Source of the DNA: Diadema antillarum
Lineage: Eukaryota
DNA length: 64,000 nt
Direction: 5' to 3'
NCBI RefSeq assembly: GCF_040938485.1
Contig: NW_027271236.1
Coordinates: forward strand, 62,001-126,000
Shown here: positions 10,341 through 54,600 of the stretch, piece after piece
Layout: every line of letters begins with the position of its first letter
Position numbering within the stretch: the first letter of the stretch is position 1
The notes under the pieces: generated by a model
Told to the model about the DNA's origin: nothing
The model's database searches: none
Seen by the model: the letters and a program-made list of their open reading frames with translations, nothing else
Position numbers and translations under genes: made by a program

Positions 10341-11496
10341 CTTTGAAATTCTCACCTCAGCCAATACTATACTACGATGTATGCTATCCCTTCAAAATAA
10401 AAACATTGTTTCTTATGGTTTTATTCACCTGTTCTCTTTTAACATGGAGAATTGACTTTGCAGTATCATGTACAAAGTATGTACAATGGATCCATCATGG
10501 AATATTATACATTGTATCTTATGGTAGCTCTCCAAATAACCTGTTTGTAATTGCTGCCTTTTTTTTTTTCTTTTTTCTTTTTTTAGATGGGTAGATCAGT
10601 TTCCAGAAGTGCCAATCATACTTGTTTTGTTCAAAATGATCCTTGATCATTTGTTAGCCTTTGTCAAACCCAGGTGCATTTTTAGTGCCACAAAAGCATG
10701 AAAGAAAAATATGAAATTAAATATATCTATTCACACTGTACTCCAGTCAACATCTCTTCCTAGACAGAGTAGTTTATTCCAGATGCACAGGAAATGGTTT
10801 GTGTGTTTGGCATAAATCATAATTATTGGTGCATAATGGTATAAAATACATTGGAGTTTTCCCTGGCTTGCTCCTTGAACTGTGTGACTTTTGATTGGGC
10901 TTATTACTCACTGTTGGTCAATATTCCACTATATTCTATGCCATCAACTTACAATGTATTTGGAGTGTGTGTTTGTGTGTATGTTGATTTTATGTTGGGA
11001 ATGTAATGTGCAGTTTTCTCTTTCAAAAGAAGCACAAACTTCACGTATGATGCCTAAATGATTTTATAGAAATGTTCCAACACAAATATATTTCTTTTGG
11101 CACTTGACTTCAGGATTTTTATAAGCAGAGATGATGCCAAACTTTTGATTGATAGACTTTATACAATGTAGAGTGCAAGGCAAGTCAAAATCAAAAGAGA
11201 TGTAAAAAGTCACCCCTAGTCAAATGTCATGTACACATTCTAATAAACATTGACATAATCCTTCTTTATGTCAGTTGTCAGTGTAATCTATGCAGCTGAC
11301 TCAATACTCATTTGCTTTTTTGTTTTGTTAAAAAATAAATGATGCTACTAAAACAAGACTGGCAAGTTTTATTGTTCAGTTGCACACAAACTTCATTCTC
11401 TTCCTTTGCTAAGGGGTTGAATGAAATCGTATGTGCTGGAAGTTTTATAGTAAGGCTCATTTTGTACTGTGCTTCATTCTGTTTCTTTTACTGCAG

Positions 11497-11626
11497 AGAT
11501 GCTTCGTTTGGTGCCTGTACCTACAACCTCACGTTACTGGACTGCCTCAAGGGAATTGACAAGGCAGTCACCCACGGCTTCCTGGACTTTGAGAACTTTG
11601 ACATTGAAGAATATGAACATTATGAG
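11497..11626 (+). CDS. CDC14: CDC14 phosphatase internal exon (A domain): (R)[43 protein letters not shown]
   Basis: ctgcag acceptor ends at 11496 and GTGAGG donor starts at 11627; 130 nt, phase 2 to 0. Peptide matches the CDC14A/B DASFG..CTY..LDCL...GF.DFE.FD..EYEHYE motif. Confidence 0.97.
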
Positions 11627-12560: not shown

Positions 12561-12773
12561 TACTGTAAAAGTGGATATTTTCGTGCGACTAATTTTTCGC
12601 GCTTCGCCGGGTCAGAAGAGTTTCGCGTGTTTTTAATTCCGCGGAATCAAGACATCATGCACAGGAACGTATGGCAAGCAAAAATATTCGCGTGCTTTTA
12701 TTTTCGCTCTAGTTTCCGATTGCGCAAAATGCGCGAAAATTTCAACACCGTGAAAATTTCCACTTTTACAGTA
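12561..12773 (+). mobile_element. Tc1/mariner-type MITE, copy A (~210 bp, TA TSD)
   Basis: TA-CTGTAAAAGTGGATATTTTCG ... GAAAATTTCCACTTTTACAG-TA. Confidence 0.9.
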
Positions 12774-15700
12774 GAGTAGTACCCTGTTATAGGGAAACTG
12801 CTGTACATACTTGCAAGCATACAAATATAATTTTGCAGAGCACTTTCCAATAGAGAATGCAAGTTGATAGATTGTAGGTTGAAACCTGTACCCTCTACAC
12901 ATAGACTTTAGAAGTTTCTGTGTTGGCCATTAATGAAGGCATTTGGTTTTCATGTTTAGTTTCTGTTTCGTAACGCACAATAATGATCACAAGTTATTGA
13001 AGAAAAGTGAAGAGCTGCCATTGTTGCACATTTAGATATTATGCTGCATAGTAGCATAAATGAAGATAGGTCAGTTTACATGTCATATAGTGAGCTATTT
13101 GCGGTCACTTAATGGTTATGACTTGTTTGGTGATACGCTTACAGCTTATCACCTATTTGCATTTGTCATAAATCTTCCGTTTTATCTTTTTTCTTCTTTC
13201 TTTCTGACGTATTTTGTCAATGCTATATCTCTACAATGACTTGACCAATTACTGTAACATGAAAGTTTCAGTCATTTGATCTCATGTCAATATATCGATA
13301 AAGAAAACTTGTCATAGCATTAACTTATATGCGACGTCATTTAGGCGCCATTTTGTGATTTAGAGATGATGTCCAATGATCAATCATATCGTCGTCCTAA
13401 ATGTCATATCTTTATCATTTTTAGTGGAGAAAATGTTCATGTGACGGCTAGTCTTCTTGCACAATACTTGTTAGGTTATCATGACATGCGCGTATGCCAT
13501 CTTAAAGTGACGAGTTTCATATCTCGTGTTGCTTTTCTAGTATACATAATTATGTAAAACTATCGATCTCGGCATTTATGTCAATATGGAATCAACTACA
13601 ATTAAAGGACTTTATTTGATACTTCTCTTGACTTTTGTGTCAGAATAGGAAGTTATTATAGTTTGTTTTGTTTGTTTTTTAGTACTGGAGACTAATTATG
13701 CATTTTGGCTTTTTATTCTAAAGTGTGGGTATGAAGTATATATTCATTCAAAATTAATGTAATCTCAAGACGTATGGAGAATAGTTATTGACCTATATTT
13801 ACATGTCGTACGCAATTCATACAACAGACTTCAAACACTGCATAGTTTAGACTTTGAGGTGCATGTTCAGTACTAAAAGTATGTTAGGACCTCAACAGAA
13901 ATGGACATTGATGGAGTCACTTTGCCTGTAGCAATAACTAAAATCTTGGAAAATGTAATAAAAGTATCAAGGGAGCTACCTTTGAAAATAGCACTTCATA
14001 AAGTCACAAAAATATCATTGCAGGGTGCATGCTACTGTACCCATAAGTGCCCGCTGAAATATGAGTAGAGGTACGCTGTAGCTTTATTAAGAGGGTGAAG
14101 TGTTTTGATCGAACCATTATGAAGTATATTTTTTGGTGATGGATTTAGAGGATGAGTCTGATCCTGCCAAAATGAAACGGGAATCTTCTGCCTGTGGACA
14201 AGGAGAGGTCAATATACCAGATTACAGTCATGCCAGAGACAGCCAGACACATTCAAGCAGTCTTCAAAAAGAATTTATGTCCCCCCCCCCCCCCAAGTAT
14301 TCTCTGCCCTGTGACCCACCTTTACACTTTCTGTGCCCAATGATCCCTAAGTAGGCAACTCTTATTTTGATGTTCCTCATTGGATTTATCCCATCATGCC
14401 TGAGGGCTTAACATGTATTTTTTTGCTTCATTAATCACTACATTCAATATCCTGTATCACCCTGCATCGATGACGGAGATAAAATGTCAAATGCAGGGAT
14501 ACAGTCGTTCATCATAATCAAGTTAATTTCATATAGGGCCTAAATCAAATTACTTGAACTTTCATCAGAATTATTGAACAACACAGCATTTAAGATTCTG
14601 GCTCCTATATTCTGGCTCCTATAGATGGGTAAAAATGGTACATGTATCTAGAGGCCAAAATGTAAAATGCTAAAATTATTATAAGGAGAGACAGAGGAAA
14701 AGAGATAGATGTGTTCAATAGTTATACACGATGCATACATACTAGAACATGGAAAGAGAGGTATTGATTAGTGGTTGATTGATTGTTTGATTGATTTAAT
14801 CAATTGATCAGGATAGATCAAAAGACAAAGTAGATGGGGTGTTACTACATGTGTAGTGTGTATAAAGAAGGGGGATTTTTTTGACTGCATCACTTCCATA
14901 GTACAGGGTAGCACAATTACCTTGTATCGTAAGATGTGTCACATACTTTAACATGGCCCATAATGTCAGTTGAAATTGCTCTGCTATTTGTGGATGTGAC
15001 TACCAAAAGACATCTGAAACGTGATCATGTTTTCAACCCAGGAAGCATTTACAATAAGTGCCTCAAATCTATGGTCCTGTTCGATTGCTTCTTTGAAAAC
15101 ACCATCCACTGCAGGGCTGTATTCATGATTCATACAGATTCCTATTACACATCCTCAGAGGAGTCAATATCAAACTGTGCATTTTGCTACAGACGGTCAT
15201 TCCTTAGCATATAATCTGCACGTGCCCCCAAATATTGCAAGTTAATTTCACAAATATGCCCTCTCCAGCCAGCTGAGTGATATGCATCTGAATCTGATTT
15301 CCGTTCCATCCCAAGTGCGCAGCGCAATTAATTCTCGATTGCTGTGTAGGAATGCGGGAAGGTGCATGAGCATCCAATTTTGAGATGATTTCCTTCCTCC
15401 AGTATTTTACAATCAAACCCCACTCCCTGGCTACAGCATCGTTTCCTCATCGCTGTCTCTACTCCGGATCCCGCTTCCTGGGGGCTGAATGCATACTGCT
15501 GGTTCCTCCCAGGGCAATTTTGTTGGAGAAGTCATCCCACTGTAATTGGTCGTTGAACTCTGGGAGGGCCTTAGCCATGTCTGGTATTGGCCTGCATGCA
15601 TTGCATTATCAGTGGTTTTGTGAATGAAGCTTGTTGAAACTGGTATAGTTGATCAATCAGGGAAATATCTCGATCACAGTGTGATCGAAACTTTGTACAG

Positions 15701-16501: not shown

Positions 16502-16714
16502 TACTGTAAAAGTGGATATTTTCGTGTGACTAATTTTTCGCGCTTGGCCGGGTCGGAAGAGTTTCGCGTGTTTTTAATTCCGCGGAATCAAGACATCACG
16601 CACAGGCACATATTGCAAGCAAAAATATTCGCATGCTTTTATTTTCGCGCTAGTTTCTGGTTGCGCGAAATGCGCGAAAATTTGAACACCGCGAAAATTT
16701 CCACTTTTACAGTA
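16502..16714 (+). mobile_element. Tc1/mariner-type MITE, copy B
   Basis: Same TIRs and interior as copy A. Confidence 0.9.
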
Positions 16715-18921: not shown

Positions 18922-19143
<222 letters not shown>

Positions 19144-19795: not shown

Positions 19796-20026
19796 GCTAT
19801 CCCTACCATGCACCGGAGGCATACTTTCCCTACTTCAGAAAACACAACATCACAGCGATAGTCCGGCTGAACAAGAAGATCTACGACGCCAGGCGGTTCA
19901 CCGACGCCGGCTTCGACCACTACGATCTGTTCTTCATCGACGGCAGCACGCCCAGCGACGCCATCCTCCAGAAGTTCCTCACGTTATCAGAGAATGCTGA
20001 GGGAGCCCTTGCAGTCCATTGTAAAG
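19796..20026 (+). CDS. CDC14: CDC14 exon (G)[76 protein letters not shown](A)
   Basis: gatag acceptor and GTGAGG donor; 231 nt, phase 1 to 1. Contains the DGSTP acid loop and the HC of the catalytic motif. Confidence 0.98.
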
Positions 20027-20280: not shown

Positions 20281-21088
20281 CGGGTAATTCCATGAAGTTG
20301 GGGCAGTGTCCATGTAGCATCATGATATTTGAAAAATACATTTCAGCATAACTCAATATTAATTATGCTATACATTTATTGTTTGTAGACTTTACATTTG
20401 CATTGAGGCCACACATTTTCCTGGAAATTTTGTGCCATTCAGACTCAATTTTGATGAGGTTATTAAACAATATGTAACGGTGTCCTGTAGCATCGTGACG
20501 TGTCCATGTAGCATCGTGAAATTTTAACATTTGGTCCTAAGAGACAAATTATGGCAATTAGCTTGACCAAAATTTGATGCAATATGCATATTTATTAGAT
20601 TAGTCAGATAGCTAAATATCTCAAATTTCCTGTACACAGTTTTAATTCTAAAAGAAAATTACAAAATGTATCACGATGCTACGCGGTGTCCTTTTTTGTT
20701 ACATTAGGTTGACACCGTGTAGCATAGTGACACATTGTGTAATTTTCTTGTATAAGTAAAACTGTGGAAAATAGAGTTAAGATATTTAGCTATCTGACCA
20801 ATCTAGTAATTATGCATATTATATCAAATTTTGGTCGAGCTAATTGCATTAATTTGTCGTTTAGGACCAGATTTTAACTATCACGATGCTACATGGACAC
20901 GTCACGATGCTACAGGACACTGTTACATTTTTTAAAAATAACTTCATCAAAATTGAGTGTGAATGGCACAAAATTTCCAGGAAAATGTATGGTCTCAATA
21001 CAAATGTAAAGCCTATAAAGATAGCATAATTAGTATTGAGGTATGCTAATATGTAACACTTTGTGTCCCAACTTCACGGAATTACCCA
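20281..21088. mobile_element. 808-bp fold-back (palindromic) element with TA TSD
   Basis: TA-CGGGTAATTCCATGAAGTTGGG ... CCCAACTTCACGGAATTACCCA-TA. The arms are reverse-complementary over ~400 bp. Confidence 0.9.
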
Positions 21089-21205
21089 TACATATATGTC
21101 GAGCCAAAAGTTAGGCTACTTCTAAATCTGCAGTCAAGGATTCTGTAGTATAATTACGACAAAGGGTCTTACACGCTTCGGGGACCCCCCCCCCCCCCTT
21201 CATTA

Positions 21206-21418
21206 TACTGTAAAAGTGGAAATTTTCGCAGTGTTGAAATTTTCGCGCATTTCGCGCAACCGCAAGCTAGCGCGAAAATAAAAGCACGCGAATATTTTTG
21301 CGTGCCATATGTCCCAGTTGTTGATGTCTTGATTCCGCGGAATTAATAACACGCGAAACTCTTCTTACGTGGGCAAGCGCGAAAAATTAGTCGCGCGAAA
21401 ATATCCACTTTTACAGTA
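21206..21418 (-). mobile_element. Tc1/mariner-type MITE, copy C (inverted relative to A, B, D)
   Basis: Same TIRs; the interior is the reverse complement of A and B. Confidence 0.9.
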
Positions 21419-24933: not shown

Positions 24934-25072
24934 CCGGCCTTGGGCGGACAGGCACACTGATAGGCTGCTACATCATGAAGCACTACCGGTTCACGGCGGC
25001 TGAGACCATTGCCTGGATTAGGATATGTAGGCCAGGCTCTGTCATTGGGCCTCAGCAGCACTATATGGAGGA
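24934..25072 (+). CDS. CDC14: CDC14 exon (A)[45 protein letters not shown](E)
   Basis: ttccag acceptor and GTGAGT donor; 139 nt, phase 1 to 2. Completes HCKAGLGRT (CX5R) with the previous exon. Confidence 0.98.
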
Positions 25073-26044: not shown

Positions 26045-26192
26045 GAAGCAAGCCAGTATGTGGGTACAAGGTGACATCTTTAGGAAGAAGGCTAGAGAGG
26101 GACAGGTTGCAAATAAGAACAGCGTGTCGAGGATACTCAGCGCTGTGGACGACATCACCATCAACGACAACGACCGGACGATGCCGTACGGG
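26045..26192 (+). CDS. CDC14: CDC14 exon (E)KQASMWVQGDIFRKKAREGQVANKNSVSRILSAVDDITINDNDRTMPYG
   Basis: Polypyrimidine tract plus cag acceptor, GTGAGT donor; 148 nt, phase 2 to 0. KQAS.WVQGDIFR and I.S..DD..I match CDC14A. Confidence 0.95.
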
Positions 26193-28279
26193 GTGAGTGG
26201 AGGAGGGGAGGGAATATATTCAAACAGTGGAATACTAGTATTCACTCTTTGGAATTCTGATGGAATCTTGATTTATTAATTTGTGTATTTTTGATAAATT
26301 ATTACTTTTTCATAGTGTTGCAGGACCCCCAAGAATAGTAGTTAGTATACCACTGATAGGCTAAATAAATGAATTAAATATATTGAACCAAAGAGGGGGT
26401 TTACACTTTGAACGACAGAATGCATTGTGGAATTACATATGTGAAACACATTTCTAAATGTGTATAGAGTTATGGAGTGTTCACACACTGAAATCAATTC
26501 TCTTCTTCTGACTGCTAACTGCACATGACATTACACTTTCCATTGTACAGGACCTACAGTAGGAGTAAAACACCATTCATTTGCTGATCTTGTAATCTAG
26601 TCAGAATAATTATGTTGAAATAAATAGATATAATAGCTGCCTCACAAACTTTAATCTGTAAATCAAAATATGCAATGAAGAATACACTTACACTTGGCAG
26701 TAGTATACTATGTGAATGTACCATGGAGAAAGTAATAATGCAGTCATGTCAAACTCCACCCCTTAGTCACCTTACAGAGGTCAAACCATTCAGAGTATAA
26801 ACCTGCCACCCGTGATTACGTACAAATTGATGGAAAAGACCTCTGTAGAGACCATGTTTTGGAAAAATGTGATGAAACTTTGCTTTCAGACCCATTAAAG
26901 TTATATTGATAGCATACACATTTGGGCACACGTTTCTGTATATGTTTTTAAACCAACAAGTTCTTAAATACGTGTGAGAGCCTTGAACAAAGAAATTGAA
27001 ATGCAGAATAGGGAAAGCAAGCTGGAAAGAAGATGGATGGGCAGAAATGAAAAGAAATTCAAATGGAGAGAGATGAAGAGATTCAGTGGAAATGCTCAGA
27101 AAAACATTCACACCTGAAAAAAAGATATACTCAGTTGATGGATCTGTAGAAAGATAGGAGACAGTATGTAAAACGTCGAAGCCTTCAGATGCAAGCTGTT
27201 CCAAGAATGTGCACCTGGCATAGAACGCTTGCAACCTTGGTTGCTGAATAGGTGCATTAGGCAATGTAGAGAAATGTATGGTGATCTGTAGACCCACATT
27301 GGCAAGGGCATAGGACTCGGCAGGGATCCACACAAGCGACCTTGTATTACAAAATCAGCAGTAGGTGGCATGGCGAACCTTCCTTTAGGTCACATTTGGA
27401 AAGAAGAAACAGCCAGCTTTGACGTTATGCATACACTTCGTAACTCGTCAAAATGGGAACATTCCTAACCCACTGAAATAAATGAAAAAAAAAATTGTAG
27501 GAATTTACTTCTGTGAAAACGTGTTGTAAACTGAGTGGTTCATTGCTGACTCAGTTAGGCTTCATGTTTTGTCCACACAAAAGGGGATTTAGAAATCCAT
27601 TATGGATTTAGAAATCCATAGCAACCACTATGAAGTGTTTTTCAGATAATCCTGGTACTTGGCATATTCATTAAAGCACACTCTATTCAGGATTATTGCA
27701 AAGTGTCAGTGTTACTGATGGCTGTTTTTGAAAACTTGCAAGGATTTCACGTTTCTCGAGGGCAAAAGATGGAGAAAAGTGAGAAGAAAAATGTGTCTAA
27801 AAAGCCTGTAGAATCTTCATCCATATTCATGCTTCCAACTTGAGGGTAAGATGCAAAAAGGGATTATTTCTTCAGGAAGTATTATTATGGGACATCAACA
27901 TTGTTCACCGACTGTAAAACATGCTATTAGATGTGACCTTTCAGAAATTTGTAGGTAGTGTTGGTATGGTCTCAAATGCAGATTGCGTAATTGTATGAGT
28001 AAGGTCTGTGGTGTCTTGTTGCAAAATAGGTAGGGTTGAAATGAGGACTGTAGGATATCTCTAATACATGTCACACATTCACAATGAAGAACTGATTAGA
28101 GATACAAAGTAGGCTTGGCAAGCATTAGTTTATTACAGGCATTGTTTGTGTCTGCGTATGTGTGTAAGAGTTTGCATTTTGTGTGTGTGTATTTCTTGAA
28201 AAGGAAGAAGTGTAGAATTAACGCGAGAAATGGAGAAAAAAACAAGAAAAATGTTTGGTCCCCGTCTGCATAGTTTAAA

Positions 28280-30126: not shown

Positions 30127-30140
30127 GTCTCCATAGCAAC
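30127..30140 (+). promoter_or_regulatory. RFX X-box GTCTCCATAGCAAC overlapping a splice acceptor
   Basis: Full match to the GTHNYYATRRNAAC consensus. Confidence 0.5.
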
Positions 30141-30261
30141 CTGGTGAGTCCTACAAACTCCGCTCCTCCATCAGCTCCTCGCAGACGATGACGCAGGGCG
30201 ACAAGCTGCGGCAGCTCAAGGTTTCAAGGAAGGCGAGGTCGGCGACCACAGGAAGTCTCAA
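30137..30261 (+). CDS. CDC14: CDC14 exon QPGESYKLRSSISSSQTMTQGDKLRQLKVSRKARSATTGSL(K)
   Basis: ccatag acceptor and GTAAGA donor; 125 nt, phase 0 to 2. Carries the conserved TQGDKLRxLK motif. Confidence 0.93.
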
Positions 30262-36647: not shown

Positions 36648-37357
36648 GTTCAGACGACAAGCCTTAAAGGGGAAGGCTAGTAACTGATCAGTGGGAATCA
36701 GTGGAAATGCTGGGAGATGATTGTTCCAATCCTTATGGGATTCATTCAAGAGTTCATTGTATATCTCTTGTTGTGTGAAAATGATTTGCTTCAGAACGGT
36801 CTCATATTCAAGTAATGTGCAGATTAATGCTCCGTCACTGACCAGGGACGCTAACCTGGAAGCATTAAACTGCACATTACTTGAATATGAGACCATTCTG
36901 AAGCAAATCATTTTCACACAACAATAGATATACAATGAACTCTTGAATGAATCCCATAAGGATTGGAACAATCAACTCCCAGCATTTCCACTGATTCCCA
37001 CTGATCAGTTACTAGCCTTCCCCTTTAACCTCGAGGGTAGGAAACCTTGAGGTTAGCGCTTGTAGTTAGGGGCCGTGAAGATGCACTCGTAGTTAGCTAA
37101 CCTCGAGGTTTGCTCGATGTTAAGAGCCACAAGAAATCTTATGATTATCGCTCTAACCATGAGCCGCGGGGGGTCCCCACTCGTAGTTAAGCACCATGTG
37201 GACACAAAAATCAACGCACTCAAAGGGGCAGGAATTTGACCTCGAGGTTTCGTAACCGCGAGGTTAAGATTCGTCGTGTGGACACACGTCGTAGTTAGGG
37301 GGCAAGAGCTTAACATTGAGGTTTCATAACCTCGAGGTTAGGATTTGTCGTCTGAAC
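36648..37357. mobile_element. Harbinger-like MITE (host of the nested element)
   Basis: GTTCAGACGACAAGCC[TTAA]CCTCGAGG on the left vs CCTCGAGGTTAGGATTTGTCGTCTGAAC on the right; repeated AACCTCGAGGTT palindromes. Confidence 0.75.
36668..37024. mobile_element. 357-bp near-perfect hairpin MITE with TTAA TSD (Kolobok-like)
   Basis: TTAA-AGGGGAAGGCTAGTAACTGATCAG ... CTGATCAGTTACTAGCCTTCCCCT-TTAA; ~164-bp arms with about 4 mismatches by eye. Confidence 0.93.
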
Positions 37358-39041: not shown

Positions 39042-39167
39042 GATTTCCTCAGCCACAACCTCTGCGACCTCTCCTGCCAAATCTTCCAAGGCCATCCCGT
39101 CCACCCACGTGTCCAGTGTGCGGCGGTCAACCAGGCACTCTGCGGCTGCAAACTCAGCCCTCAAAAG
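39042..39167 (+). CDS. CDC14: CDC14 Ser/Thr-rich tail exon (R)ISSATTSATSPAKSSKAIPSTHVSSVRRSTRHSAAANSALK(S/R)
   Basis: Long pyrimidine tract plus cag acceptor, GTAAGA donor; 126 nt, phase 2 to 2, open in the expected frame. Confidence 0.87.
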
Positions 39168-41170: not shown

Positions 41171-41270
41171 CTCGGTCCGGATTAGCAAAGAGTATAGCAC
41201 AGGACATAATGCGGGCGACTACACCACCAGTACCACGTCCTCATCACTGAAATACACCCGTTCCACACCA
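41171..41270 (+). CDS. CDC14: CDC14 penultimate (probably skippable) exon (S)SVRISKEYSTGHNAGDYTTSTTSSSLKYTRSTP
   Basis: ccacag acceptor and GTAAGT donor; 100 nt, phase 2 to 0. Ends in RSTP, compared with human CDC14A RSIP at the equivalent junction (recalled). Confidence 0.8.
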
Positions 41271-44200
41271 GTAAGTGGTCCTCTCGCCCATCCATCCCTC
41301 CTCAGTCATCCCCACCCTCTTTCATCTACTTGTAGCTAACAAAAGACTCCCCTGTGGTTATCCTGTCTCGTGCTGTGTTCACTAATGTTCATGTTTCTGA
41401 TGATTTCTTCCTTTCTGTTCTGACTGCATGTGTTGCTGTATCAACCATGATTCTTCTAGATATCTAACACATCTGAGCTCTTTGTCTGAAAAACTTCCTC
41501 CTTCAACCATATCTATTTTTGGTGTTTAGTCTCATCCATGTTTGTCTCTAGACACAAAGTTTCAGTTTCAGTTTCAGTAAGTTTTATTTCTCCACTTGTA
41601 CATAACAGAAAATAATATAAGAATATCGAACATATTAATCACAAGTCATGAAAATATAAACAAAATTTCGCATTACAAATATATAATCATGTGAAATAAT
41701 ACATAAATATCCTTTCAGATCTTAAAGTGTACAGGTGGAGGAGACCGTTATCAAAGTCTTCTTGTCTGTCTGTGTACAATACATGTACATTTCCTTCCAT
41801 TAATCTTCACAGAACAGATGTCTGTTGCTCAATATCCAATCTTTATGATCTCCTTTAGATTGCAAGATGAATGGGCCTATAGGATTAAAAAAAAAGAATC
41901 AGTATGTAAGCTAAACTAAACTAAACTAAAACTAAACAGAAGGGAAACATTATGTGGGGCTTGGTCAATTGGCCAAATGATAAGTGAGTAGCAACAAGAC
42001 ATTGAGAATATGATTTTCATTGTTCCTTTGCTTTCTTAATGGGGTTAATAAACTGAGGATCTTATTGCATCTTCAAAATTCAACCTGTTGGAGGTGTATG
42101 TGTGTTTGTGGGGAGGGGGGGGGGGGGACCACTTTAACTCTAAGATGGTTGCTATGATAAGTCTTTTTTTTCTGACTATGCAACACTCTGTACTGGACAA
42201 TATTGCAACTAATGTGGTGGCAATAATGCCATACCTTTTTAATGTTGTAAAATGGACAAAGCAACTTCAGCTGTGTACTTCTTGGCTTTTTCAGACTTGA
42301 TGGTTCTGTCTCTTTATTTCTTACCAGTACTTTCTTCATCTAAGCCTTTCTATTTAAGGGTCTCTTTTTGTTAATAGTGTTGTTCACTGTGAAGATCATC
42401 CTAACATAGCCAAAAAGATTTGTCAATAATCATCTATCCTTTTGTGTGTACATTAACATATTTTGCCTAGACATGGCATTTATTTTCATTCTAACAAACG
42501 AAAACATGTAGAGTTAACATTCCACTTGTTTCATGTTTGAATCTTGCATGCACTTGTTTTCCCTTTATCACCACCCATTCTTTCATTGTTTCTGAACAAG
42601 AGAGTTAATATCCAGTTCCTGTGTGAAGCTTTCATTCCTAACTCCTCTCCTCAAGTCATATGCCATGCCTAACTTACAGATAACATTGCATGTGTTATGA
42701 TGTGTGAATTGTACCAAACAAATGGAGATGGTTCATCTTGATATTGTCAATGCATTTCTTTCCAAACAGGACAACAGAATGCATCCATGGAGAAATATAG
42801 CACAGTTATACTGTTGTAAAGTACAAATTATAATGTTTCACTAACTACGGATTAATTTTTGTTGTAATTTTGATGATTTGTCATTTTATTTGGCTGCCAT
42901 GTGTATGTATACAACCATGTTTTGAATCTGTTTTACAGGGTGCTTATTACAGGAGTACCAACCCCTGCATCCATGATGATTTGAATAAATATTTCTGACA
43001 AAAATCAGACTTTCCAACCAATCTGAATTTGGAGGAAAGAATCTAAATTTTGACCATTCCCAGCTCTTGTTTCAGTAGGATTTTCATATTTTTCTTGATA
43101 ATTTTACCACACACTCCTATGGGAAGTGCTCTTCTTTTCCTACTTTTGAGCTACATGTAAACCCAAACCTATTTTTCAGTCAGAAAGGTTAGGAGGTCTG
43201 CCTGTGAATATAACAATGTGATTTAGCTTTGGTTGGCAAGAGAGAAATGATCATGTACTTTTTAAAAATTTGTATGGTATAACATTTGACAAAATAAATG
43301 AAGGCTTGATAAGATTGTGTAAGTATCTTTGATACACATTTCTTTCTTTTTTCTTTTGCTGGTATGTCACCTATACCTCCCTTCCCAGTACTGCTTACTA
43401 AGAGCAACACGTGGCTTTGTATGTCACAGTGATTACATTTTAGAGTTCATATACTGCGGTATGAGTTGGTGGTAGATAAAGAAGTTGATTGTAGTTTAGC
43501 AATTTTATCACTTCATGTATCACATTTTTGCTCTGATTACTGGCAGAATGATTTAAGGAATCAAAACACTGACCTGCACAAAACTGAAAGACTGTAAAGT
43601 TTGCTAGAGTCTTTCATCGGCCTGCATCTGTTGTTTATTTACATATTTCTACCTTGTATTCAAACAGACACTGTACCTGTATGTACTGATTAACGTGCAT
43701 GAATCGTGAAAAAACTCCCCCAAAAACTGAACAGTCCTATTGTGGCAACATCATCTATTGATAGATAAATCTTGAATCAATCCATCGTGAGCATTTTCAA
43801 ATGCTCTTATGTAGATGTATGTATTATGAATGTTGTTAGTGTGATATGCACTCCTTATTGTGTAGGCATATAAGTCCACAAGCTTTATGTAGATCACCAA
43901 AATGCATGCATTTGACACTGATTCGTGTCAGTCCTTAGCCTACGCATATTTAGCCAGAATCATGTGATATTTAGCATAGGATGCATGAATAAAACAGCTG
44001 TCACTTTATATCTGAACAGAAATGTAAAACCATCCTCAGGGATGCCATCTCGTTCATTTTTCCTTTTTTTCAGTATTTGTACTATTTTTTTTTTCCAAAA
44101 TTACTGCAGCTTTCATCCATAATACTGTCTTTCCCAAATTGTATTACTTCACATATCCATTGCAGGAAAGTAAGCATTTTTAAAAAACCAAATAATAGAA

Positions 44201-44403
44201 TTTTCACCCCTCAGAACAATGCAGTGCTGTTTATAACATGTGCATCTCTCAAACAGAAATGTAAAGCCATATAAAGCAGTAGAAAAACAAAAAACAAAAA
44301 AGCAATTTAAGAATAAAGCTCCAACGTGGTATGAGATTATGTTCTAACCATCACCCGTTTTCTTTTTCAAATACATTCTCCTTCCCTCCGCTACCTGACA
44401 AAG

Positions 44404-44538
44404 GCACTAATAGCTAGTGGCAGGTTGAGATATCTCGAGGCCAACTTAGCCAACCACCCAAGGAGATACATATACATGTACGACCCAGGACAGCCTGTCT
44501 ACCCAGATTATGTAAACTCCCAGTTTTGTGTCTTTGTG
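44404..44538 (+). CDS. CDC14: Candidate CDC14 cassette exon ALIASGRLRYLEANLANHPRRYIYMYDPGQPVYPDY(VNSQFCVFV)
   Basis: Pyrimidine tract, ctaac branch-like motif near 44344, aag acceptor at 44403. Donors at 44512 (GTAAAC, weak) or 44539 (GTACGC) both give phase 0 to 0. Confidence 0.45.
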
Positions 44539-44725
44539 GTACGCCATCACAGTTGCCTAATGAGTTGGGCACGTTTGCTTGCGTGCCAGAGAGCTATAAA
44601 TGTACATCTGGCGTCGTCCTTGTTTTCTCGTGGACATGTTTTTGTGTCGAGCTCACTTTGATTTTAGCTTTGAAGGTCTCGCTGCCTGAGAATCCCTACT
44701 TTTGATTTTTTCCCCCATTCTGTAG

Positions 44726-44960
44726 ACTGTCTTTCCTCATTACACTCGTCTTTGGTTACATAGCCCTCTCGCTCGGCACTGTATACTTTGTGTTTCAGAA
44801 GGTCAGCCTCATATCTGTGGCAAAGCATTATTATCACCGTTTCATTATTGGCTTGTTTGCAGCTTCTTGCTTGGTGTCAGATGTTGTACTGAAGTTAATT
44901 CCGTTGTTTGTCTCAGGTATGAATGCAGGTATGGCTAGAGAACTGACTAAGAGGAGATGA
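44726..44960 (+). CDS. CDC14: Candidate hydrophobic alternative CDC14 exon (R)LSFLITLVFGYIALSLGTVYFVFQKVSLISVAKHYYHRFIIGLFAASCLVSDVVLKLIPLFVS(GMNAGMARELTKRR*)
   Basis: ttttttcccccattctgtag acceptor. Phase-2 entry matches the donor at 39167. 77 further sense codons run to TGA 44958-60. Strong donors at 44917 (cag|GTATGA) and 44929 (cag|GTATGG), both phase 1. Confidence 0.62.
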
Positions 44961-47311
44961 AAACAATCTAACCTTGCCTGGAAAGCTTTGCTGCAGTGAA
45001 ATCGTACATTTGCTGCCTAAACTTTAGGGAGATGAGGCAAACAGTAGTGTTGAAATTTTGAAACAAAATGAAATGAAAGAATTAAAGTCAAAATTGTTAG
45101 TTGAGTCCTATCATAGAAGGCTCCCAGTTGATTGATGTATTGTTGCTTTTTAAACCCAAATTTAGCAGTTTCAGTACTAGATTCATCAGAAGGTGCAAGC
45201 AGTAGTTTTAGGAAGCTGGAACCCCGTCACCAGAGAAGTGGCTTTCAAGCATGGCCACGTGATCATGTAATCATGCTTCAGCCCCCACTCCCACAAAAAA
45301 AAGAAAAGATAAAAAGAAGAAAACTTAACAGACAGTTGTCAGAGGTATACGTTTTCAAGCTGCCAAGAGGGCCATTCATCTCTGTGTATGTTCCAGATTT
45401 TGTTCATATGATTTAAGAATGTGTTTTCCATGATTGTTTGCTAGAAATCAGTAAACATTAGAAGATATAATTTTCCAGCCAAGCCTTCAGGTAGAAAAGA
45501 AAATTCAGTCAGTTGTTATTCTGTATGATAGACAGAAATAGACTGGAACACTTTTCTTTTGTGCTTCTGAATAGGAACAAAGGTCAGAGGTCAAGAGTTA
45601 TGAATTTTATCTGACATGAATAAAGGGTCGCGTGTGTAGGAGAATGGTTAGTGACTGACTGCATGAGATGGCAGAGGCAATCCAGTGGCTGTGTGTGTAG
45701 AATTGTTATCGTTGTGTTTTTTCATCTATCTGTGTGCGTGCAAAGTGTTGATCTTGGTATCTTGAATTCTGTTTCAGTTGTCAAATCTTGAATATTGTGA
45801 TTAGTTGGAGCTGTCCTGTTAATTTTTGCTAGCCCTACTCAACCTGTTTGTCTTGACTGTGCAAGAGACTGCTGTATGCTAATATTTCTGCTACCAGAAA
45901 TATTACTGTGAGGTGGCCCCTTACATGTACATGCTTTCCGTACTGCTCCTTTCCTTTTGTGGACAATGCAGGCCTCGCGCCGATCACGGGTTGCTCCCGC
46001 CATTTGCCGCTGCTACGAAATGGTCCAAGTTTGGTAAAAGAGGCACGGCTTGCCTTGCATGGCAACTGCATGCATGAAGCTCAGCTGACATGAGAAAGGC
46101 TTGCACTGTACATGTGTGTTTTACAACGAGTTGTTCTCACACATCGGTTGAGCATGCTTCCCCAGTTTTTTCTTTAAATAGGAAATGGTGCATTACATGT
46201 AACCATACATGTTTTCATATATTACTGACAAATTTATGAAGTGTCCATGAATGCCTCTCACATATTCTAATGTGCTCATGTCCGTGGAAGTGCATGGCCA
46301 CTTTTTATTGTCACATAAGAATTATGCCTTCAACAGTTATGAAATAATCTGCCCTTTTGAGAATGTGAGCTCTTTCTTTTCTTTAAAGCCTGATACTTCT
46401 TTAGTAAGCATACATTGCTCCTTTATTCTCTGTTAAACATTTACAATGAGTGTTCTTACATATGATTTTTTTGTCCAAAGATTTTTGCTTATGAGAAAAA
46501 GAGGAAATGACATGCTACCTACAATGCATTTGTCTATGGAACTCTTCTCAAGTATTTGGATGAATGAATTTGATTCTGTTTTCTGAATTGGAGTTCCCGG
46601 GGTTCCCTTATTTCAAAGAAGGCCAAGCATTTGATGGAGGTTTAAATGGGAAGTGATACATGTACATGTATGCAGCAATTTGAAGAAGTAATTATTTTCC
46701 ATTGAGTTCCAAACTACATTGTATTCTTGTTGATGATCACAAGATCACAAGTATTGTGTCTACTCTCTCTATTTCACAATAAGTTGCAGAATTTCATTTA
46801 AGCTAAAATTAGATGCCAGTGATTTATTTTGCCCATCATTTTTTATTTTTTTTTATTTCATGGCCCTGTAAATCTATTCTCAAAATTGGATGTATGCATG
46901 TCGATTCAACCTTGAGATTCTGCTTAAGTTGATTTAGTCATTCTTGAATGTGCAATCCTTACAGTATATGATTTGCTTCTTTTTTTTTCAGCTATTGTAC
47001 CGATTCATCAACACAAATCTCTTGATTTACCTTGCTTTGAAGGAAATGCAAACAGAATAGTCAATCCTTCTATTATGTCACTCATCAATTTTCCATTGTC
47101 ATTAATGATCATCCCTAACACAGAATTTACTCCATTTAATATGATCCACTTTGTACTATTCTGACATGCAGTTGTTCAGTCAATAAGTATCTGTGTGTGT
47201 GTGTGTGTGTATGTGTATGTATGTATCCAAACCTATCCAACTTTTGATAATGAAACCATTTCGATTGTGATCTGAAACCAGAGAGTTGAAATGCCCGTCA
47301 TATCCTCCCAG

Positions 47312-49139: not shown

Positions 49140-49334
49140 TACTGTAAAAGTGGATATTTTCGCCCGACTAATTTATCGCGCTTGGCAAGGTATGAAGAGT
49201 TTTGCATGTTTTTAGTTCAGCGGAATCGAGACGTCAACTACTGGAACGGATGGCTAGCAAGAATATTTGCTTGCTTTTATTTTCGCGCTAGTTTTCTAGT
49301 TGCGCGAAATCCGCAAAAATTTCCACTTTTTCAG
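49140..49334 (+). mobile_element. Tc1/mariner-type MITE, copy D (degenerate right end)
   Basis: TACTGTAAAAGTGGATATTTTCG start and AAAATTTCCACTTTTTCAG end. Confidence 0.85.
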
Positions 49335-51030
49335 GATGTGATGTGATTTTTTTTTTCCTTTAGTGTAGTTGCATGATTAGTTCCCTTGAAAACTTGCTCC
49401 CTCCCTCAGAAAATGCAAGCCACTTCTGCTTTGTTTTGTGTGTGTTTTTCATTTTTTTAAATTCAGTCTGAATCTGCATGAAATGGGTGACCCTTCAGGT
49501 CTTACCGCGAAGGGTCATAGGTCAGGGGACACGTGAATGATGACAAACCAGGTGTCACTTGATTGGTCTCTAGTTAGGCATCACCTTATGGCTCACTAGT
49601 CGAGTGTCCCCTATTGGCTCACTTGTTAAGTGTCATTTGATTAGTCACCAGCCATACGTCTGTCACTTGAGATTACTGAAGTACAGTGTAGCTCTTGTGA
49701 GCAAGCTTGTCAACTCTGTTGAGTTGGTTTGTGGATAACATTGACCATTCGAAATGTGTAGCTTGCACAAATTGCCAAATGGAGCAACCCTTTGCATGTT
49801 TACGTGTGAATTGATATGATTGCTCGGATTCTCTTTTGTTTTTGTTTAAATGCTCAAAGCATCTTCCAGTTGGCTTTGAAAAATGAACTGTATCTGATGT
49901 CAATATCCCTTTCAGACTCAGCTGGATGTTAAAACTCATTTACACAACTTAAGTCATCATTAAAATTGCAGTGAGTGCATATCTGTTTGATGTTCTCATG
50001 ATAATTTTGCAAATTACAGCTGCAACATTGCCCATCGATTATTATTTTTTCTCTCTCCTCTATTTTAATGACTGTTCCTGCAAGTTGCAATTGATCATTG
50101 CCTTGCCTCCAAGTTTATTTTTCTTCCAGTTTTCATATGTGTCATCTACATTCAATATTTATCTTCATTCAATATTTATTTCTTCATTTCAGCTACAAGA
50201 TTCTGCTGCCATTATACACTTTTTGTTTTCCTCGTTTGAGGTCATTTCAGCATTCTTCTTTACGCAGCTTCAAGACATGTCATTCTCTTTTTTTAAAATC
50301 TCTCCTTGTGCCGCATTGCATCTCTTTGACTAATGTCAGACATACCTTTTGATTTTTTTTTTACACGATTCCTCAGCCGTTTCTCTGTATTCATTTATTC
50401 ATTTATGCTTTATCATAAGCACAATGTAACATATTCACATGCCATCCAACTGAGTGATTGGCAAGTACAAGAAAATGTCATTTCCAGGCATGATTGATGT
50501 GCTGTCAGTGTACTCAGTTCCTTTAAAGATGCACCTTTAATACAGAAGCATGTAACTTATTATCATTCTTCTTTTTTTTTTCATTTCTTTTCTACTGAAA
50601 AAGATGTTGATTTGTTTTTATACTGAAAAAAAAAAAATTTAAAATTGGTAAAATCTGTTGTTTTTAGTGAAATCATGTCTCAGAGCCAACTAGGAGAAGT
50701 TGTGTTTTATTTGTGCTCTGCTGTGATTGACCAGTAAAAGCTACATTGTACAATGTGTATATGCCTCAAGATTAAGTTGTGAAAAGACATTAAAAGTATG
50801 TGCATTTGAGGTTAGATCGAAGTAGAAAATGTGCTGCATATCACAAGTAAGCACTTTCAACAGAACATATCAGTAATATGTGAATGGGCCCAAGAAGTGG
50901 CCTATGTATTGCATTTATCAGAATTATTTTGGAAATTCTGTAGCATCAATGAACTAGAGTATGATAATATTAAGAGGCTAACTGAAGTATTTTTTTTCTT
51001 TCTTTTCATGTTTTTCTCACCATGCCACAG

Positions 51031-51110
51031 TCGTACAAGCCCTCGTATTCATTCTACTAAGTCGGCAGCGCTTCGCTGATCCTGATCCCGTGACCCGTCT
51101 CCTCTCCTAA
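51031..51110 (+). CDS. CDC14: CDC14 terminal exon: frame 0 SYKPSYSFY* (stop 51058-60); phase 2 (S)RTSPRIHSTKSAALR* (stop 51077-79); phase 1 (V)VQALVFILLSRQRFADPDPVTRLLS* (stop 51108-10)
   Basis: Very strong pyrimidine tract plus ccacag acceptor at 51030, followed by a GC/CpG-rich block. Frame 0 and phase 2 peptides resemble the human CDC14A (SLQSEYVHY*) and CDC14B (SLSISRTKTVLR*) termini (recalled). Confidence 0.82.
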
Positions 51111-51621: not shown

Positions 51622-54600
51622 TGTACATTCTTTCCGCATTCCCTTGGTTTGTCCTTGTGAATTATTATGGATTAACAGGACACGTGTCTATTGCTATGAT
51701 ATGAACAAATATAATATCAAACGTACTCTGCATGTTCAACCATAAGAATCTTTGGCCTGAAATTCTTCATAAAAAGAGATAATTTTGTTGCATTAGTTGT
51801 GGTAACTGCTTTGTAGTATTCGAAATATGCTACTCAAAAATTTCTCGTAATATCACAGCAATGTTAAACGTTTGAATCTTGTAAGTTCACAATACAGTAG
51901 TCCCGATTCTTCTGTTTCAACAAATTGAGAGTTGCTGGACTCTACTAGAAACTTATAGTATATATTGGTGTGATTGAGTTTGCAAGTACTGCTTCAATGC
52001 AGAGTGTATCAAATTGCTGTCCAGCCTTATTGTAATATACATTTTATGTTGCTACCACATTCCAACCCTACGAGTAAGATTTAGGAATTGCTCCAATTAG
52101 CCTAGTCTGTATGTATACGTGTGTCACAGACTGCATGTGCGTACTGTGTGAGGAGATTAGTCATTAGTCCTGCGATTGCTTACCTACAGGTTACAATTCT
52201 CATAATACTCCAAAATCTGACATTTTGCATATTATATCAATATATCAATTATATCAATTCTGTAATGAGACACAGGTAGAAATGTACAGTGAAGTTTTTG
52301 ATAATTACACATTGCATGTTTCCCCTAATTTCTTGGTGGACCAAATATGTCACACTTTTAAGAGTCACACTGAGGAATGTTGGTCCTTCATTTACCAGAT
52401 ATTTTGCTGAGTGCTGTGTAGTGCCCAGTCATGTGAAAGTATTTTGTTTTTGTTTTTTACTCATTGATGAATGAAGCTCTTCTTTTGACCAAATTTCCCC
52501 ATTCTGTACACTTACGAACAAAACAGTTTATTTACCTCTCCATTCATTGGATATTCCTTGTCATTTGAGTTTGCAGTTCAAACAACTGAAACAACTGTTT
52601 CAGGGAGTGTGGTCATCTAATATAATGCTTTCTTTGTCACTCGCAGTGCAAAACAGAAACATGAGAAATTGTCAGTGAGGCTGACTTGGTTTCCATTTCG
52701 GTGCATATCAAAATAATTGTAAGGAAAGATTTTGACAGTCATCATCTTGTGTTTCTGATTTCATGACTTGATCTTTGATCTTTAATGAAAGGAATGATAC
52801 TTTGAGGTGAAAAATGTTCACTTGTCCTGTGCAAGCATGTGCCATCCCCATTGACTTTATTCAGTTAAAATATTTATGACCTGCAAAATTTACATTAAGT
52901 GAAGTAGAAGTCACAAGTTTTGAGCACCCAAAGATTGTGTTAGAGCATTGCTGTTGTTGTTTTAGTTTTAAAATCACTATTTTCCACAGTGCACAAGCAT
53001 TTCATGAAGTGAATGTTAAGGGAACTTTGAAATGTGACAGGAAATGCATATATTCTCTAAAAGGTACACAGCAAGGTAAATTGTTATTGTTGATAATGAA
53101 ATATTGTTAAATGTAAGGTATGAGATATATATATCAAGATATTGTCATTAGTTGTGATCATTGTTGCAGACAGTTGAAATACACGACTGAGTGCCTTTAG
53201 ATACAGTCATTCCAGTATAGAACATAAGCAAGATGACTCTTGGAGTTGAGTTTTCTTACAATGCTGTCGAATATGAGTATAGGGAAATTTGCAGTTTTAG
53301 GGTGATTTTAACATTTTATTCAGAAACTCTTTGTTGTTGATTTTTTTTCTCTGTTAGGATTTGAGATGAATGTGCCAAGGTTTGAAGTGAAGAAAAGTTT
53401 TGAAAGGATCCTGAGTAATTGTCTTGTATTTTCCTTTCTCTTTTGTAAGCTAATTTCCTCTCCTAGTATTCCATTATTCTCTGTCTTCATTTCCACATTA
53501 GAGCCTATGCGTGAACCAATTACGTAGCATTCTATTTTCATGTACCTAGGATGTGGATTGTTGATGAATGCACTCTCATGTTTACATTCTAAGTCTCTAC
53601 AATGCTCTAAACTTTCCATGTCCTTTGCAAAACCTACCATGGTATACATGTGGTTCTTGTTTTGTGTGGCTCTCTCAGTTTCTCTCTCTTTCTGCCTGTT
53701 GTATAGGCACAACCATTTAGGATATATCCAGAGCAGCTTTGTAGTCTATGCACACAAGTAACTCCTCTTCGTGGGTCCGTCTTGCACACTTTTACTACTA
53801 AGAGAACCTAGGGTTGTATATTTCTAAAGAGCTTGTGATACATATTTTTATACCGTACCAAAGTTGGAGAAGTAAAGAGTAAGAAGTGTGAAACGTGTAC
53901 ACAGAATTCTGAGAGATCAATGCAATCCACGTAGACAGTAGAGAGACAGAATATTAGATCGCTAGCAACTTTAGGTCATTCCATATAGCAGTTAGCAATT
54001 GCTGTATTTTGAATGTGCGCAACAAACTGATGTGCATTGCTCGTCTATGAAATACGATAAAAACCTAACTGTTGCAATGCTCATATTAAAAAAAAAAGAG
54101 TGGCTAAGTGTTGATTGTATGTTTCTGTAGTTTTTGAATTTTCACTATTATGTAGGTTTTATTTCTGTTATGAAGCTGTACTTTGAGATCTGCTCATCTA
54201 GTGTGTTTGTATTAGCTTTTGATGTAGTATAGTCCTTCATCAGCGCATATACTCTCAGGTAGCAGTGGTGTCGTGTTCTTATATCAGCTGGATTTTATTC
54301 AAGAGGGTCATCTTATGTACATGTATATGAGACCAACGTTTTTCCCCTAAGTTATCGCAGTTTGAATCAATCATATCCCAGTAGTATCAGCTGTTCATAT
54401 TTCAGAGAGAGTATATGATTAAGATAGCACTTCATTTGTGGAATAATGTTCAGTGAATTAAGTTGATGCTATGTTGAGTTTGAAGTAAGAGTTTTTCTTT
54501 TCTTTTTCAATAAGAAGTCAGTTGTAGAGATTATTCAGCATTTGTGAGATTAAAAAGAGCCAGTTAATTAGTATTTGTATCCATGCTTAACTGATACTAA

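What the first reader, a model, noticed from the sequence alone, without database searches (positions are those of the whole stretch)
44726..44960. Hidden exon encoding a membrane anchor for CDC14
The ORF track does not list this frame. It has a strong acceptor, phase-2 entry compatible with exon 39167, and a 23-residue hydrophobic stretch (LSFLITLVFGYIALSLGTVYFVF) followed by a second hydrophobic segment. It either ends with a basic tail (RELTKRR*; ATTAAA at 45081, AATAAA at 45619) or splices in phase 1 to 51031, adding LIPLFVSVVQALVFILLS-RQR. This predicts a membrane-tethered CDC14 isoform with 2-3 hydrophobic helices. I recall that vertebrate CDC14B has splice variants with hydrophobic C-termini and that hominoid CDC14Bretro localises to the ER, so membrane-anchoring by splicing may be ancestral.
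Basis: partly seen in the sequence, partly recalled or inferred. Interest (0 to 1): 0.85.

Follow-up and report, generated by a model that had tools for sequence, protein, structure and literature searches.

The report
Candidate hydrophobic-tail exon in sea-urchin CDC14
A 191-base stretch in the last intron of a sea-urchin CDC14 phosphatase gene looks like a usable alternative exon that would add a membrane-type tail, but no transcript or close-relative data could be reached to show that it is used.

Summary

For a real exon:
- With my own approximate splice matrices, the only + strand stretches with strong acceptor, strong donor, 120-300 nt and an open frame are known CDC14 exons and this one. 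Antisense DNA gives about 0.3 decoys per 10 kb, so about 0.1 in-phase decoy is expected here.
- The exon is open in exactly the two phases offered by the upstream exons (p about 0.007 in composition-preserving shuffles).
- Codon usage, a protein-language-model score and an AlphaFold control mildly favour the hydrophobic frame.

Against:
- Hydrophobicity alone is ordinary: 6-13% of intronic open frames match it.
- Only the first segment qualifies as a membrane helix.
- There are no homologues in 1.8 billion proteins.
- A distant invertebrate CDC14 locus conserves the neighbouring exons but has no counterpart, so "ancestral" is unsupported.

No echinoid sequence or transcript was reachable. My odds: real hydrophobic-tail exon 0.45, chance pseudo-exon 0.35.

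The parts
39042..39167 (+). CDC14 tail exon upstream of the candidate. It is Ser/Thr-rich and ends with two extra bases (AG).
   Evidence: The phase chain runs from exons 26045-26192 and 30137-30261. tblastn matches to other invertebrate CDC14 loci give E 2e-5 and 1e-4. Acceptor score 8.7, donor score 10.5.
41171..41270 (+). 100-nt cassette exon, Ser/Thr/Tyr-rich. It starts with one base that completes a codon and ends in phase 0. Including it changes the frame in which every downstream exon is read.
   Evidence: Acceptor 10.8, donor 7.5. A counterpart with the same phase and the same length class (1 mod 3) lies at L001:14775-14946 and carries a similar 'S..LKY(Y)TRS' motif.
44696..44725 (+). 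Pyrimidine tract and AG acceptor of the candidate exon. There is no AG in the last ~35 bases before the acceptor AG.
   Evidence: Sequence. The acceptor score of 11.8 equals the best real exons of this gene, which range from 5.1 to 13.9.
44726..44916 (+). Candidate exon, short form, 191 nt. It is open in phase 1 (the hydrophobic frame, used after 39167) and in phase 0 (a Cys/Trp/His-rich frame, used after 41270). It is closed in phase 2.
   Evidence: Donor GT at 44917 scores 8.3.
44727..44795 (+). Codons for the 23-residue uncharged segment, flanked by K-R on one side and Q-K on the other. This is the only convincing membrane-helix candidate.
   Evidence: Kyte-Doolittle 19-residue mean 2.04. 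Summed Hessa value -0.2. AlphaFold2 helix with pLDDT 92-93.
44841..44915 (+). Second hydrophobic stretch, interrupted by Asp and Lys. It is not a stand-alone membrane helix.
   Evidence: Kyte-Doolittle 2.15, but summed Hessa values of +3.7 to +6.7.
44917..44928 (+). 12-nt extension to a second donor (GT at 44929). It keeps the same phase and adds four residues. The two donor sites form an imperfect 12-nt tandem copy of CAGGTATG.
   Evidence: Donor score 9.2.
44929..44960 (+). Read-through end if neither donor is used. It gives a short basic tail and the TGA stop at 44958-44960.
45081..45086 (+). ATTAAA hexamer that could serve a terminal-exon version. It is not significant on its own.
   Evidence: Such hexamers occur 1.08 times per kb on this strand.
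51031..51110 (+). Terminal coding exon of CDC14. Phase 1 gives a basic tail ending at TGA 51077-51079. Phase 0 gives a Tyr-rich tail ending at TAA 51058-51060. Phase 2 gives the hydrophobic-then-RQR tail ending at TAA 51108-51110 and is reached only through the candidate exon without 41171-41270.
   Evidence: The first two frames are conserved at L001:16754.

Best explanation
44726-44916 (or -44928) is a genuine, probably minor or condition-specific, alternative exon in the last intron of a sea-urchin CDC14 gene.

How it would work:
- When cassette exon 41171-41270 is skipped, exon 39042-39167 is joined to 44726 and the exon is read in the hydrophobic frame.
- This replaces the usual basic or Tyr-rich CDC14 tail with a tail that starts with one 23-residue membrane-type helix flanked by basic residues, followed by a weaker amphipathic or hydrophobic stretch.
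- The message then either ends at 44958-44960 or continues into the third frame of terminal exon 51031.
- The catalytic domain would stay in the cytosol, tethered to a membrane, most simply the ER. This is the way alternative 3' splicing gives the TC48 form of TC-PTP its hydrophobic ER-directing tail.

Shown: the sequence features, the phases, the exon-likeness relative to decoys, and the better protein-likeness of the hydrophobic frame.

Inferred: that the exon is spliced at all, which frame is used, membrane insertion, and which membrane.
For: 1. Splice signals are as strong as at this gene's real exons. The acceptor scores 11.8 and the donors 8.3 and 9.2, against real exons at 5.1-13.9 and 4.1-11.7.
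2. With thresholds of acceptor >=8, donor >=8, length 120-300 nt and at least one open frame, the + strand of the 64-kb window yields only known CDC14 exons and this exon. The same filter on 133 kb of antisense DNA gives 4 decoys, none with two open frames. That predicts about 0.3 decoys in any frame, or about 0.1 in phase, in the 11.9 kb between exons 39167 and 51031. In locus L001 a laxer filter recovers the real exons with few decoys.
3. The 191 nt are open in phases 0 and 1. These are exactly the phases delivered by exons 41270 and 39167, so all four exon combinations reach a stop in the last exon. Dinucleotide-preserving shuffles give 0.11 for one given frame and 0.007 for both.
4. The synonymous-codon log-odds of the hydrophobic frame (-0.01 per codon) exceeds 47 of 49 intronic decoy frames (median -0.28) and overlaps the low end of real exons (-0.03 to +0.47). 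The other open frame scores -0.36. GC3 is 0.51, against flank GC of 0.38.
5. The language-model 'recognition' score is 2186 for the hydrophobic frame, with membrane-transporter fragments as nearest neighbours. It is 1063 for the other frame and 1390 for a length- and hydrophobicity-matched intronic decoy.
6. AlphaFold2 on the single sequence gives mean pLDDT 85 for the hydrophobic frame and 66 for the matched decoy.
7. The first segment has 23 uncharged residues and a summed Hessa value of -0.2.
8. There are precedents for localisation set by alternative 3' splicing. CDC14B has four 3' variants with different localisations (PMC2422853). TC48 has a hydrophobic C-terminus and localises to the ER (PMC5764380).
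Against: - No transcript evidence of any kind was reachable.
- phmmer found no similar protein among 1.84 billion representatives, the word-indexed search found none, and a metagenome scan found none.
- There is no counterpart in the last intron of the one distant CDC14 locus that could be fully read.
- The scan's follow-up on the terminal exon (s1-220762) judged the membrane-type frame not real. Its basis was not visible to me.
- The codon-usage value lies in the overlap between decoys and real exons.
- The splice matrices are my own approximations from general knowledge.
- The language-model and AlphaFold controls are single comparisons.
- The exon is T-rich and A-poor (T 40%, A 18%). That composition by itself favours pyrimidine tracts, open frames and hydrophobic translations.
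- The language-model recognition score is still below the 2300 that 91% of known-family proteins reach.
Confidence: 0.45

Rival explanations
1. It is a chance pseudo-exon. A T-rich, A-poor stretch of intron happens to carry a pyrimidine tract with an AG, two GT sites and open frames, and its translation is hydrophobic simply because T-rich codons encode Phe, Leu, Ile and Val. It is not spliced into CDC14 mRNA at any meaningful level.
For: - Open frames of at least 70 codons are common here, about 20 on the + strand between 39.2 and 51 kb.
- 13% of decoy frames are as hydrophobic, rising to 20% on the + strand.
- Given the exon's own composition, one frame stays open in 11% of shuffles.
- Another strong decoy acceptor lies nearby at 44074.
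- There are no homologues anywhere.
- The hexamers after the stop are at background density.
- There is no counterpart in L001.
- The earlier scan note says the membrane-type frame is not real.
Against: - The joint occurrence of strong acceptor, strong donors, 191 nt open and correct phase is expected only about 0.1 times in this interval.
- Both relevant phases being open has p of about 0.007.
- Codon usage ranks third of 50 against decoys.
- The matched decoy scores clearly lower in both the language-model and AlphaFold comparisons.
Confidence: 0.35
2. It is a real exon, but the hydrophobic frame is not the one that matters. It may be included together with cassette exon 41171-41270 and read in phase 0, which returns the last exon to its usual basic-tail frame. 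Alternatively it may be low-level splicing noise or a regulatory exon with no selected protein product.
For: - Phase 0 is also open across the whole exon, and 100 + 191 nt restores the basic-tail frame.
Against: - The phase-0 translation is rich in Cys, Trp and His.
- It has decoy-like codon usage (-0.36), a GC3 of about 0.31, and the lowest language-model recognition, 1063.
Confidence: 0.13
3. The stretch belongs to something else: an exon of a separate or antisense gene, or a fragment of a mobile element lying in the CDC14 intron.
For: - GC is raised (0.44-0.475) over 44300-44700, just upstream.
- Several long open frames overlap at 44335-44960.
Against: - There is no second copy in the window.
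- There is no Pfam or Rfam match on either strand.
- There are no exon-like signals on the - strand here.
- The next gene, membralin, starts only at about 63574.
Confidence: 0.05

Closest known systems
TC-PTP (PTPN2) isoforms TC45 and TC48
   Same: [quoted passage not shown] This is the mechanism proposed here.
   Different: It is a different phosphatase family (classical PTP, not CDC14) and shows no sequence similarity. TC48 is experimentally established, whereas the exon here has no transcript support.
Vertebrate CDC14B 3' splice variants (CDC14B1, B2, B3, CDC14Bpar) and hominoid CDC14Bretro
   Same: It is the same gene family. Alternative 3' exons change the C-terminal tail and with it the localisation, and the retrocopy sits on the ER (PMC2422853).
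   Different: [quoted passage not shown] It mentions no transmembrane or hydrophobic C-terminal anchor. No sequence similarity to the candidate exon was detectable.
The two-frame terminal exon of CDC14 with its upstream cassette exon
   Same: It uses the same locus logic. A cassette exon whose length is not a multiple of three (41171-41270; L001:14775-14946) decides in which frame the last exon is read. The candidate exon (191 nt, 2 mod 3) would add a third setting.
   Different: The two-frame arrangement is conserved in a distant invertebrate. The candidate exon and the third frame are not seen there.

Membership tests
CDC14 dual-specificity phosphatase gene (host gene) | DSPn and DSPc catalytic core with the HCxxGxxR(T) active-site loop, encoded by the exons on the same strand | tested here: met
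   Per-exon Pfam hits are DSPn (E 3.8e-6) and DSPc (E 1.7e-6). They fall just under the whole-protein cut-offs because each exon is only a piece of the domain. The junction reads AVHCK|AGLGRTG across exons 19796-20026 and 24934-25072. The catalytic exon is 83-87% identical to CDC14 exons of many animals.
Alternatively spliced coding exon | Functional-looking acceptor and donor | tested here: met
   Acceptor 11.8 and donors 8.3 and 9.2 with my approximate matrices, within or above the range of the gene's real exons.
Alternatively spliced coding exon | Open frame in the phase set by the upstream exon, leading to a stop that does not truncate prematurely | tested here: met
   The exon is open in phases 0 and 1, and every combination ends in the last exon or at 44958-44960.
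Alternatively spliced coding exon | Spliced reads or cDNA across the junctions | not testable with these tools
   No transcript collection for this species was reachable. The fragment database holds no echinoid sequence, as shown by control searches.
Alternatively spliced coding exon | Conservation of frame and splice sites in orthologues | tested here: inconclusive
   Only distant invertebrate loci could be fetched. L001 has the flanking exons but no counterpart. Close relatives (echinoids) could not be reached.
C-terminal membrane anchor (tail-anchor-like or signal-anchor segment) | One hydrophobic segment of about 19-25 residues predicted to insert, flanked by charged residues | tested here: met
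   The first segment has 23 uncharged residues between K-R and Q-K, a summed Hessa value of -0.2 and a Kyte-Doolittle mean of 2.04. It is marginal rather than strong. No dedicated topology predictor was available.
C-terminal membrane anchor (tail-anchor-like or signal-anchor segment) | For a classical tail anchor, the membrane segment lies within about 30-40 residues of the C-terminus | tested here: not met
   The first segment is followed by 54 residues in the read-through form and about 66 in the form spliced to 51031. If used, it would be a late signal-anchor or hairpin, not a textbook tail anchor.
   The second stretch has summed Hessa values of +3.7 to +6.7 and contains Asp and Lys. No 19-residue window of the spliced tail falls below +1.5 apart from those in the first segment.
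TC48-type localisation switch | Membrane (ER) localisation of the isoform that depends on the alternative tail | not testable with these tools
   This needs expression of tagged constructs.

The most novel reading that the evidence does not exclude
The exon is real and conserved among sea urchins. In that case one CDC14 gene makes a membrane-tethered isoform, and two upstream cassette exons of 100 nt and 191 nt act as a frame selector, so that the single terminal coding exon is translated in all three reading frames: a basic tail, a Tyr-rich tail and a hydrophobic tail.
Probability: 0.3. Interest if true: 0.65.

Novelty: new member of a known kind. Interest (0 to 1): 0.4.

Why it matters
CDC14 phosphatases act at nucleoli, centrosomes, spindles and cilia, and their C-terminal tails decide where they go.

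If the exon is used:
- A membrane-tethered isoform would add a compartment not described for this family. It would be a second example, after TC48, of a phosphatase moved to a membrane by a 3' splice choice.
- Together with the conserved cassette exon, it would make the last exon a rare case of a coding exon read in three frames.

If it is a pseudo-exon, the case is still useful as a calibration. Hydrophobic open frames after good acceptors are common in T-rich introns and should not be called membrane anchors without junction reads.

Tried and rejected
1. A word-indexed homology search with the 77-residue peptide found nothing. The same search with the real neighbouring exon as a control also found nothing. 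The negative is therefore uninformative for this species.
2. phmmer of the peptide against 1.84 billion representatives gave 0 hits. This rules out a separate known protein family. It does not rule out an isoform hidden inside a 50% cluster.
3. A metagenome scan for relatives found none.
4. I spent the last homology search on the catalytic exon, hoping for spliced fragments or echinoid loci. It returned only genomic reading frames of distant animals at 87% identity or less.
5. I fetched four such loci.
   - L001 could be read through to its terminal exon and shows no counterpart.
   - L007 ends before its terminal exon.
   - In L004 and L006 the 3' ends were not reached.
   - The organisms behind the records could not be identified.
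6. Repeat, Pfam and Rfam checks of 43.5-46.5 kb found nothing.
7. Full-length CDC14 isoforms of sea urchins or vertebrates could not be retrieved. The length window of the homology tool excludes them for any stop-free query from this window, and typing a spliced protein was not appropriate.
8. The vertebrate 'hydrophobic C-terminus' recollection stayed unverified after four literature searches and reading PMC2422853.
9. Poly(A) hexamers were rejected as evidence because they are at background density.

Full report
**What is in the window**

The + strand carries a CDC14 dual-specificity phosphatase gene.
- Per-exon Pfam hits to DSPn and DSPc and 83-87% identity of the catalytic exon to CDC14 exons of many animals identify it.
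- From splice sites and phase continuity I read these exons: 11497-11626, 18958-19045, 19796-20026, 24934-25072, 26045-26192, 30137-30261, 39042-39167, a 100-nt cassette at 41171-41270, and a terminal coding exon from 51031.
- The next gene, membralin, starts near 63574.

Exon 26045-26192 ends in phase 0. Exons 30137-30261 and 39042-39167 each end with two extra bases. The reading frame of exon 39042-39167 is confirmed by tblastn matches of its Ser-rich peptide, with an 'SV(K/R)RSTRHS' motif, to three other invertebrate CDC14 loci.

**The observation**

All the stated features are present.
- An AG at 44724-44725 follows a long pyrimidine tract with no other AG in the last ~35 bases.
- Base 44726 completes an Arg codon with the AG that ends exon 39167.
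- The frame from 44727 is open to TGA 44958-44960 and starts with 23 uncharged residues between K-R and Q-K.
- Two CAG|GTATG donors lie at 44917 and 44929, 12 nt apart and in the same phase.
- Both donors join 51031 in its third frame, which reads a hydrophobic run, then RQR, and stops at 51108-51110.

**Is it more than chance?**

Three parts of the observation carry no weight.
- Open frames of at least 70 codons are common: about 20 lie on the + strand between 39.2 and 51 kb.
- Of 189 non-exonic open frames of at least 63 codons, 13% reach the same Kyte-Doolittle maximum and 6% the same summed Hessa value. Locus L001 shows the same pattern, with four of six long frames in its last intron exceeding 2.0.
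- Poly(A) hexamers occur about once per kb.

One part is overstated. The second hydrophobic stretch contains Asp and Lys and has summed Hessa values of +3.7 to +6.7, so '2-3 helices' does not hold. Only the first segment (-0.2) is a credible, if marginal, membrane helix.

Other parts do carry weight.
- *Splice scores.* I used approximate splice-site matrices written from general knowledge, for ranking only. The acceptor (11.8) equals the best real acceptors of the gene, and the donors (8.3 and 9.2) lie inside the real range.
- *Decoy rate.* I required acceptor >=8, donor >=8, length 120-300 nt and an open frame. The + strand of the whole window then returns only known CDC14 exons and this one.
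  - The same filter on 133 kb of antisense sequence (this window and four fetched loci) returns four decoys, each with a single open frame.
  - That is about 0.3 per 10 kb, or about 0.1 in-phase decoy expected between 39168 and 51030.
- *Two open phases.* The 191-nt exon is open in phase 1, the phase offered by exon 39167, and in phase 0, the phase offered by cassette 41171-41270. It is closed in the third phase.
  - In 20,000 dinucleotide-preserving shuffles of the exon itself, a given frame stays open in 11% and both frames in 0.7%.
  - All four inclusion/skipping combinations of the two cassettes therefore reach a stop in the terminal exon.

**Which frame, if any, codes?**

Every comparison favours the hydrophobic frame over the phase-0 frame, but none is strong.

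| Measure | Hydrophobic frame | Phase-0 frame | Decoys | Real exons |
|---|---|---|---|---|
| Synonymous-codon log-odds per codon | -0.01 | -0.36 | 49 intronic frames, median -0.28; only 2 score higher | -0.03 to +0.47, leave-one-out |
| GC3 | 0.51 | about 0.31 | flank GC 0.38 | 0.50-0.71 (five core exons and 39042-39167) |
| Language-model 'recognition' | 2186, nearest clusters are membrane-transporter fragments | 1063 | 1390 for one matched 77-residue decoy at 53528-53758 | - |
| AlphaFold2 mean pLDDT, single sequence | 85, one long helix | - | 66 for the same matched decoy | - |

The codon value sits in the overlap of the two distributions. The language-model and AlphaFold results each rest on a single control.

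**External evidence**

None could be obtained for this species or its close relatives.
- The peptide has no homologue among short proteins, among 1.84 billion representatives or in metagenome contigs.
- A real neighbouring exon also finds nothing.
- The catalytic exon finds only reading frames called on genomic contigs of distant animals, at 87% identity or less.

Echinoid sequences are therefore absent from the reachable fragment set. Full-length isoforms are excluded by the length window of the search tool.

**What the distant loci show**

L001 (an unidentified invertebrate, NCBI assembly GCA_022702875.1) has a compact CDC14 gene with the same 3' architecture.
- A Ser-rich exon ends with two extra bases at 12364.
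- A cassette at 14775-14946 (172 nt, 1 mod 3) carries an 'S..LKYYTRS' motif like exon 41171-41270.
- A terminal exon at 16754 has a phase-0 reading that ends in a Tyr-rich tail and a phase-1 reading that ends in a basic '...TMLR' tail. These match the two ordinary tails in the window.

This independently supports the earlier scan note that the last exon is read in two frames chosen by exon skipping.

L001's 1.8-kb last intron contains no exon-like candidate even at lax thresholds. Its third terminal frame is not membrane-like. In L007 no hydrophobic candidate lies between the corresponding exons.

The idea that membrane anchoring by splicing is ancestral therefore has no support. A lineage-specific exon is not excluded.

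**Literature**

- Rosso et al. 2008 (PMC2422853) show four CDC14B 3' splice variants that localise to nucleoli, nuclear speckles or microtubules.
[quoted passage not shown] It mentions no transmembrane or hydrophobic C-terminal anchor.
- Searches for a hydrophobic or tail-anchored CDC14B/C variant found nothing.
The recollection about hydrophobic C-termini is unverified.
- The closest established mechanism is TC-PTP. Alternative 3' splicing gives TC45, with nuclear signals, or TC48, with a hydrophobic C-terminus at the ER (PMC5764380).

**Weighing**

For a real exon:
- The expected number of in-phase decoys is about 0.1.
- CDC14 genes are known for complex 3' splicing.
- The two-phase openness and the frame-specific protein-likeness both point the same way.

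Against:
- There is no transcript or conservation evidence at all.
- The T-rich composition favours all the features at once.
- The distant locus is negative.
- The earlier follow-up note says the membrane-type frame is not real. I could not see its basis, and I count it as a moderate negative.

My odds:
- 0.45: a real alternative exon read in the hydrophobic frame.
- 0.35: a chance pseudo-exon.
- 0.13: a real exon that matters in the other frame or is splicing noise.
- 0.05: something else.

If the exon is used, the tail is not a textbook tail anchor, because 54-66 residues follow the helix. It would more likely be a late signal-anchor or hairpin that leaves the phosphatase domain in the cytosol.

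Noticed in passing
window 41171-41270 and 51031-51079; L001:14775-14946 and L001:16754-16800: A cassette exon with length 1 mod 3, followed by a terminal exon read in two frames (Tyr-rich tail or basic tail). The arrangement is conserved between this gene and a distant invertebrate CDC14 gene, including the phases.
   Followed up: partly
window 1026-1325 and 1372-1671: Two 300-nt direct copies at 100% identity, 346 nt apart, a few hundred bases from the N run at 561-692. They may be a recent tandem duplication or an assembly artefact.
   Followed up: no
window 12561-12773, 16502-16714, 49140-49352 (direct); 21204-21418 (inverted): An interspersed repeat family of about 213 nt, at 70-93% identity, scattered through the CDC14 introns in both orientations.
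   Followed up: no
window 36664-36831 / 36861-37028 and 20524-20690 / 20711-20877: Long near-perfect inverted repeats with 168-nt arms (98% and 84% complementary) and short loops. They look like MITE-type or foldback elements inside introns.
   Followed up: no
window 26770-27354 (- strand): A 195-codon open frame antisense to CDC14, inside its intron. It has an exon-like acceptor/donor pair at 26771-27021 (scores 12.0 and 8.2) and no Pfam match.
   Followed up: partly
window 44914-44937: The two candidate donors form an imperfect 12-nt tandem copy (CAGGTATGAATG / CAGGTATGGCTA), so both lie in the same phase.
   Followed up: yes
window 44074-44169: A second strong acceptor (score 11.6) with a weaker donor (7.5) and a low-complexity open frame, 650 nt upstream of the candidate exon. 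It is probably a decoy.
   Followed up: partly
L001:6431-6517 and 7548-7634; L006:1495-1581 and 5251-5337: Other invertebrate CDC14 genes carry two tandem versions of the 'VENGD.NW...[10 protein letters not shown]' exon, possibly mutually exclusive. The window has only one, at 18958-19045.
   Followed up: no
L006:10421-10492 and 10508-10579: Two extra tandem copies of the last 24 codons of the catalytic exon lie just downstream of the intact exon.
   Followed up: no
L004:7913-9343 (- strand): A DDE transposase gene (PF13843) sits inside the CDC14 intron between the second catalytic exon and the next exon in that species.
   Followed up: no
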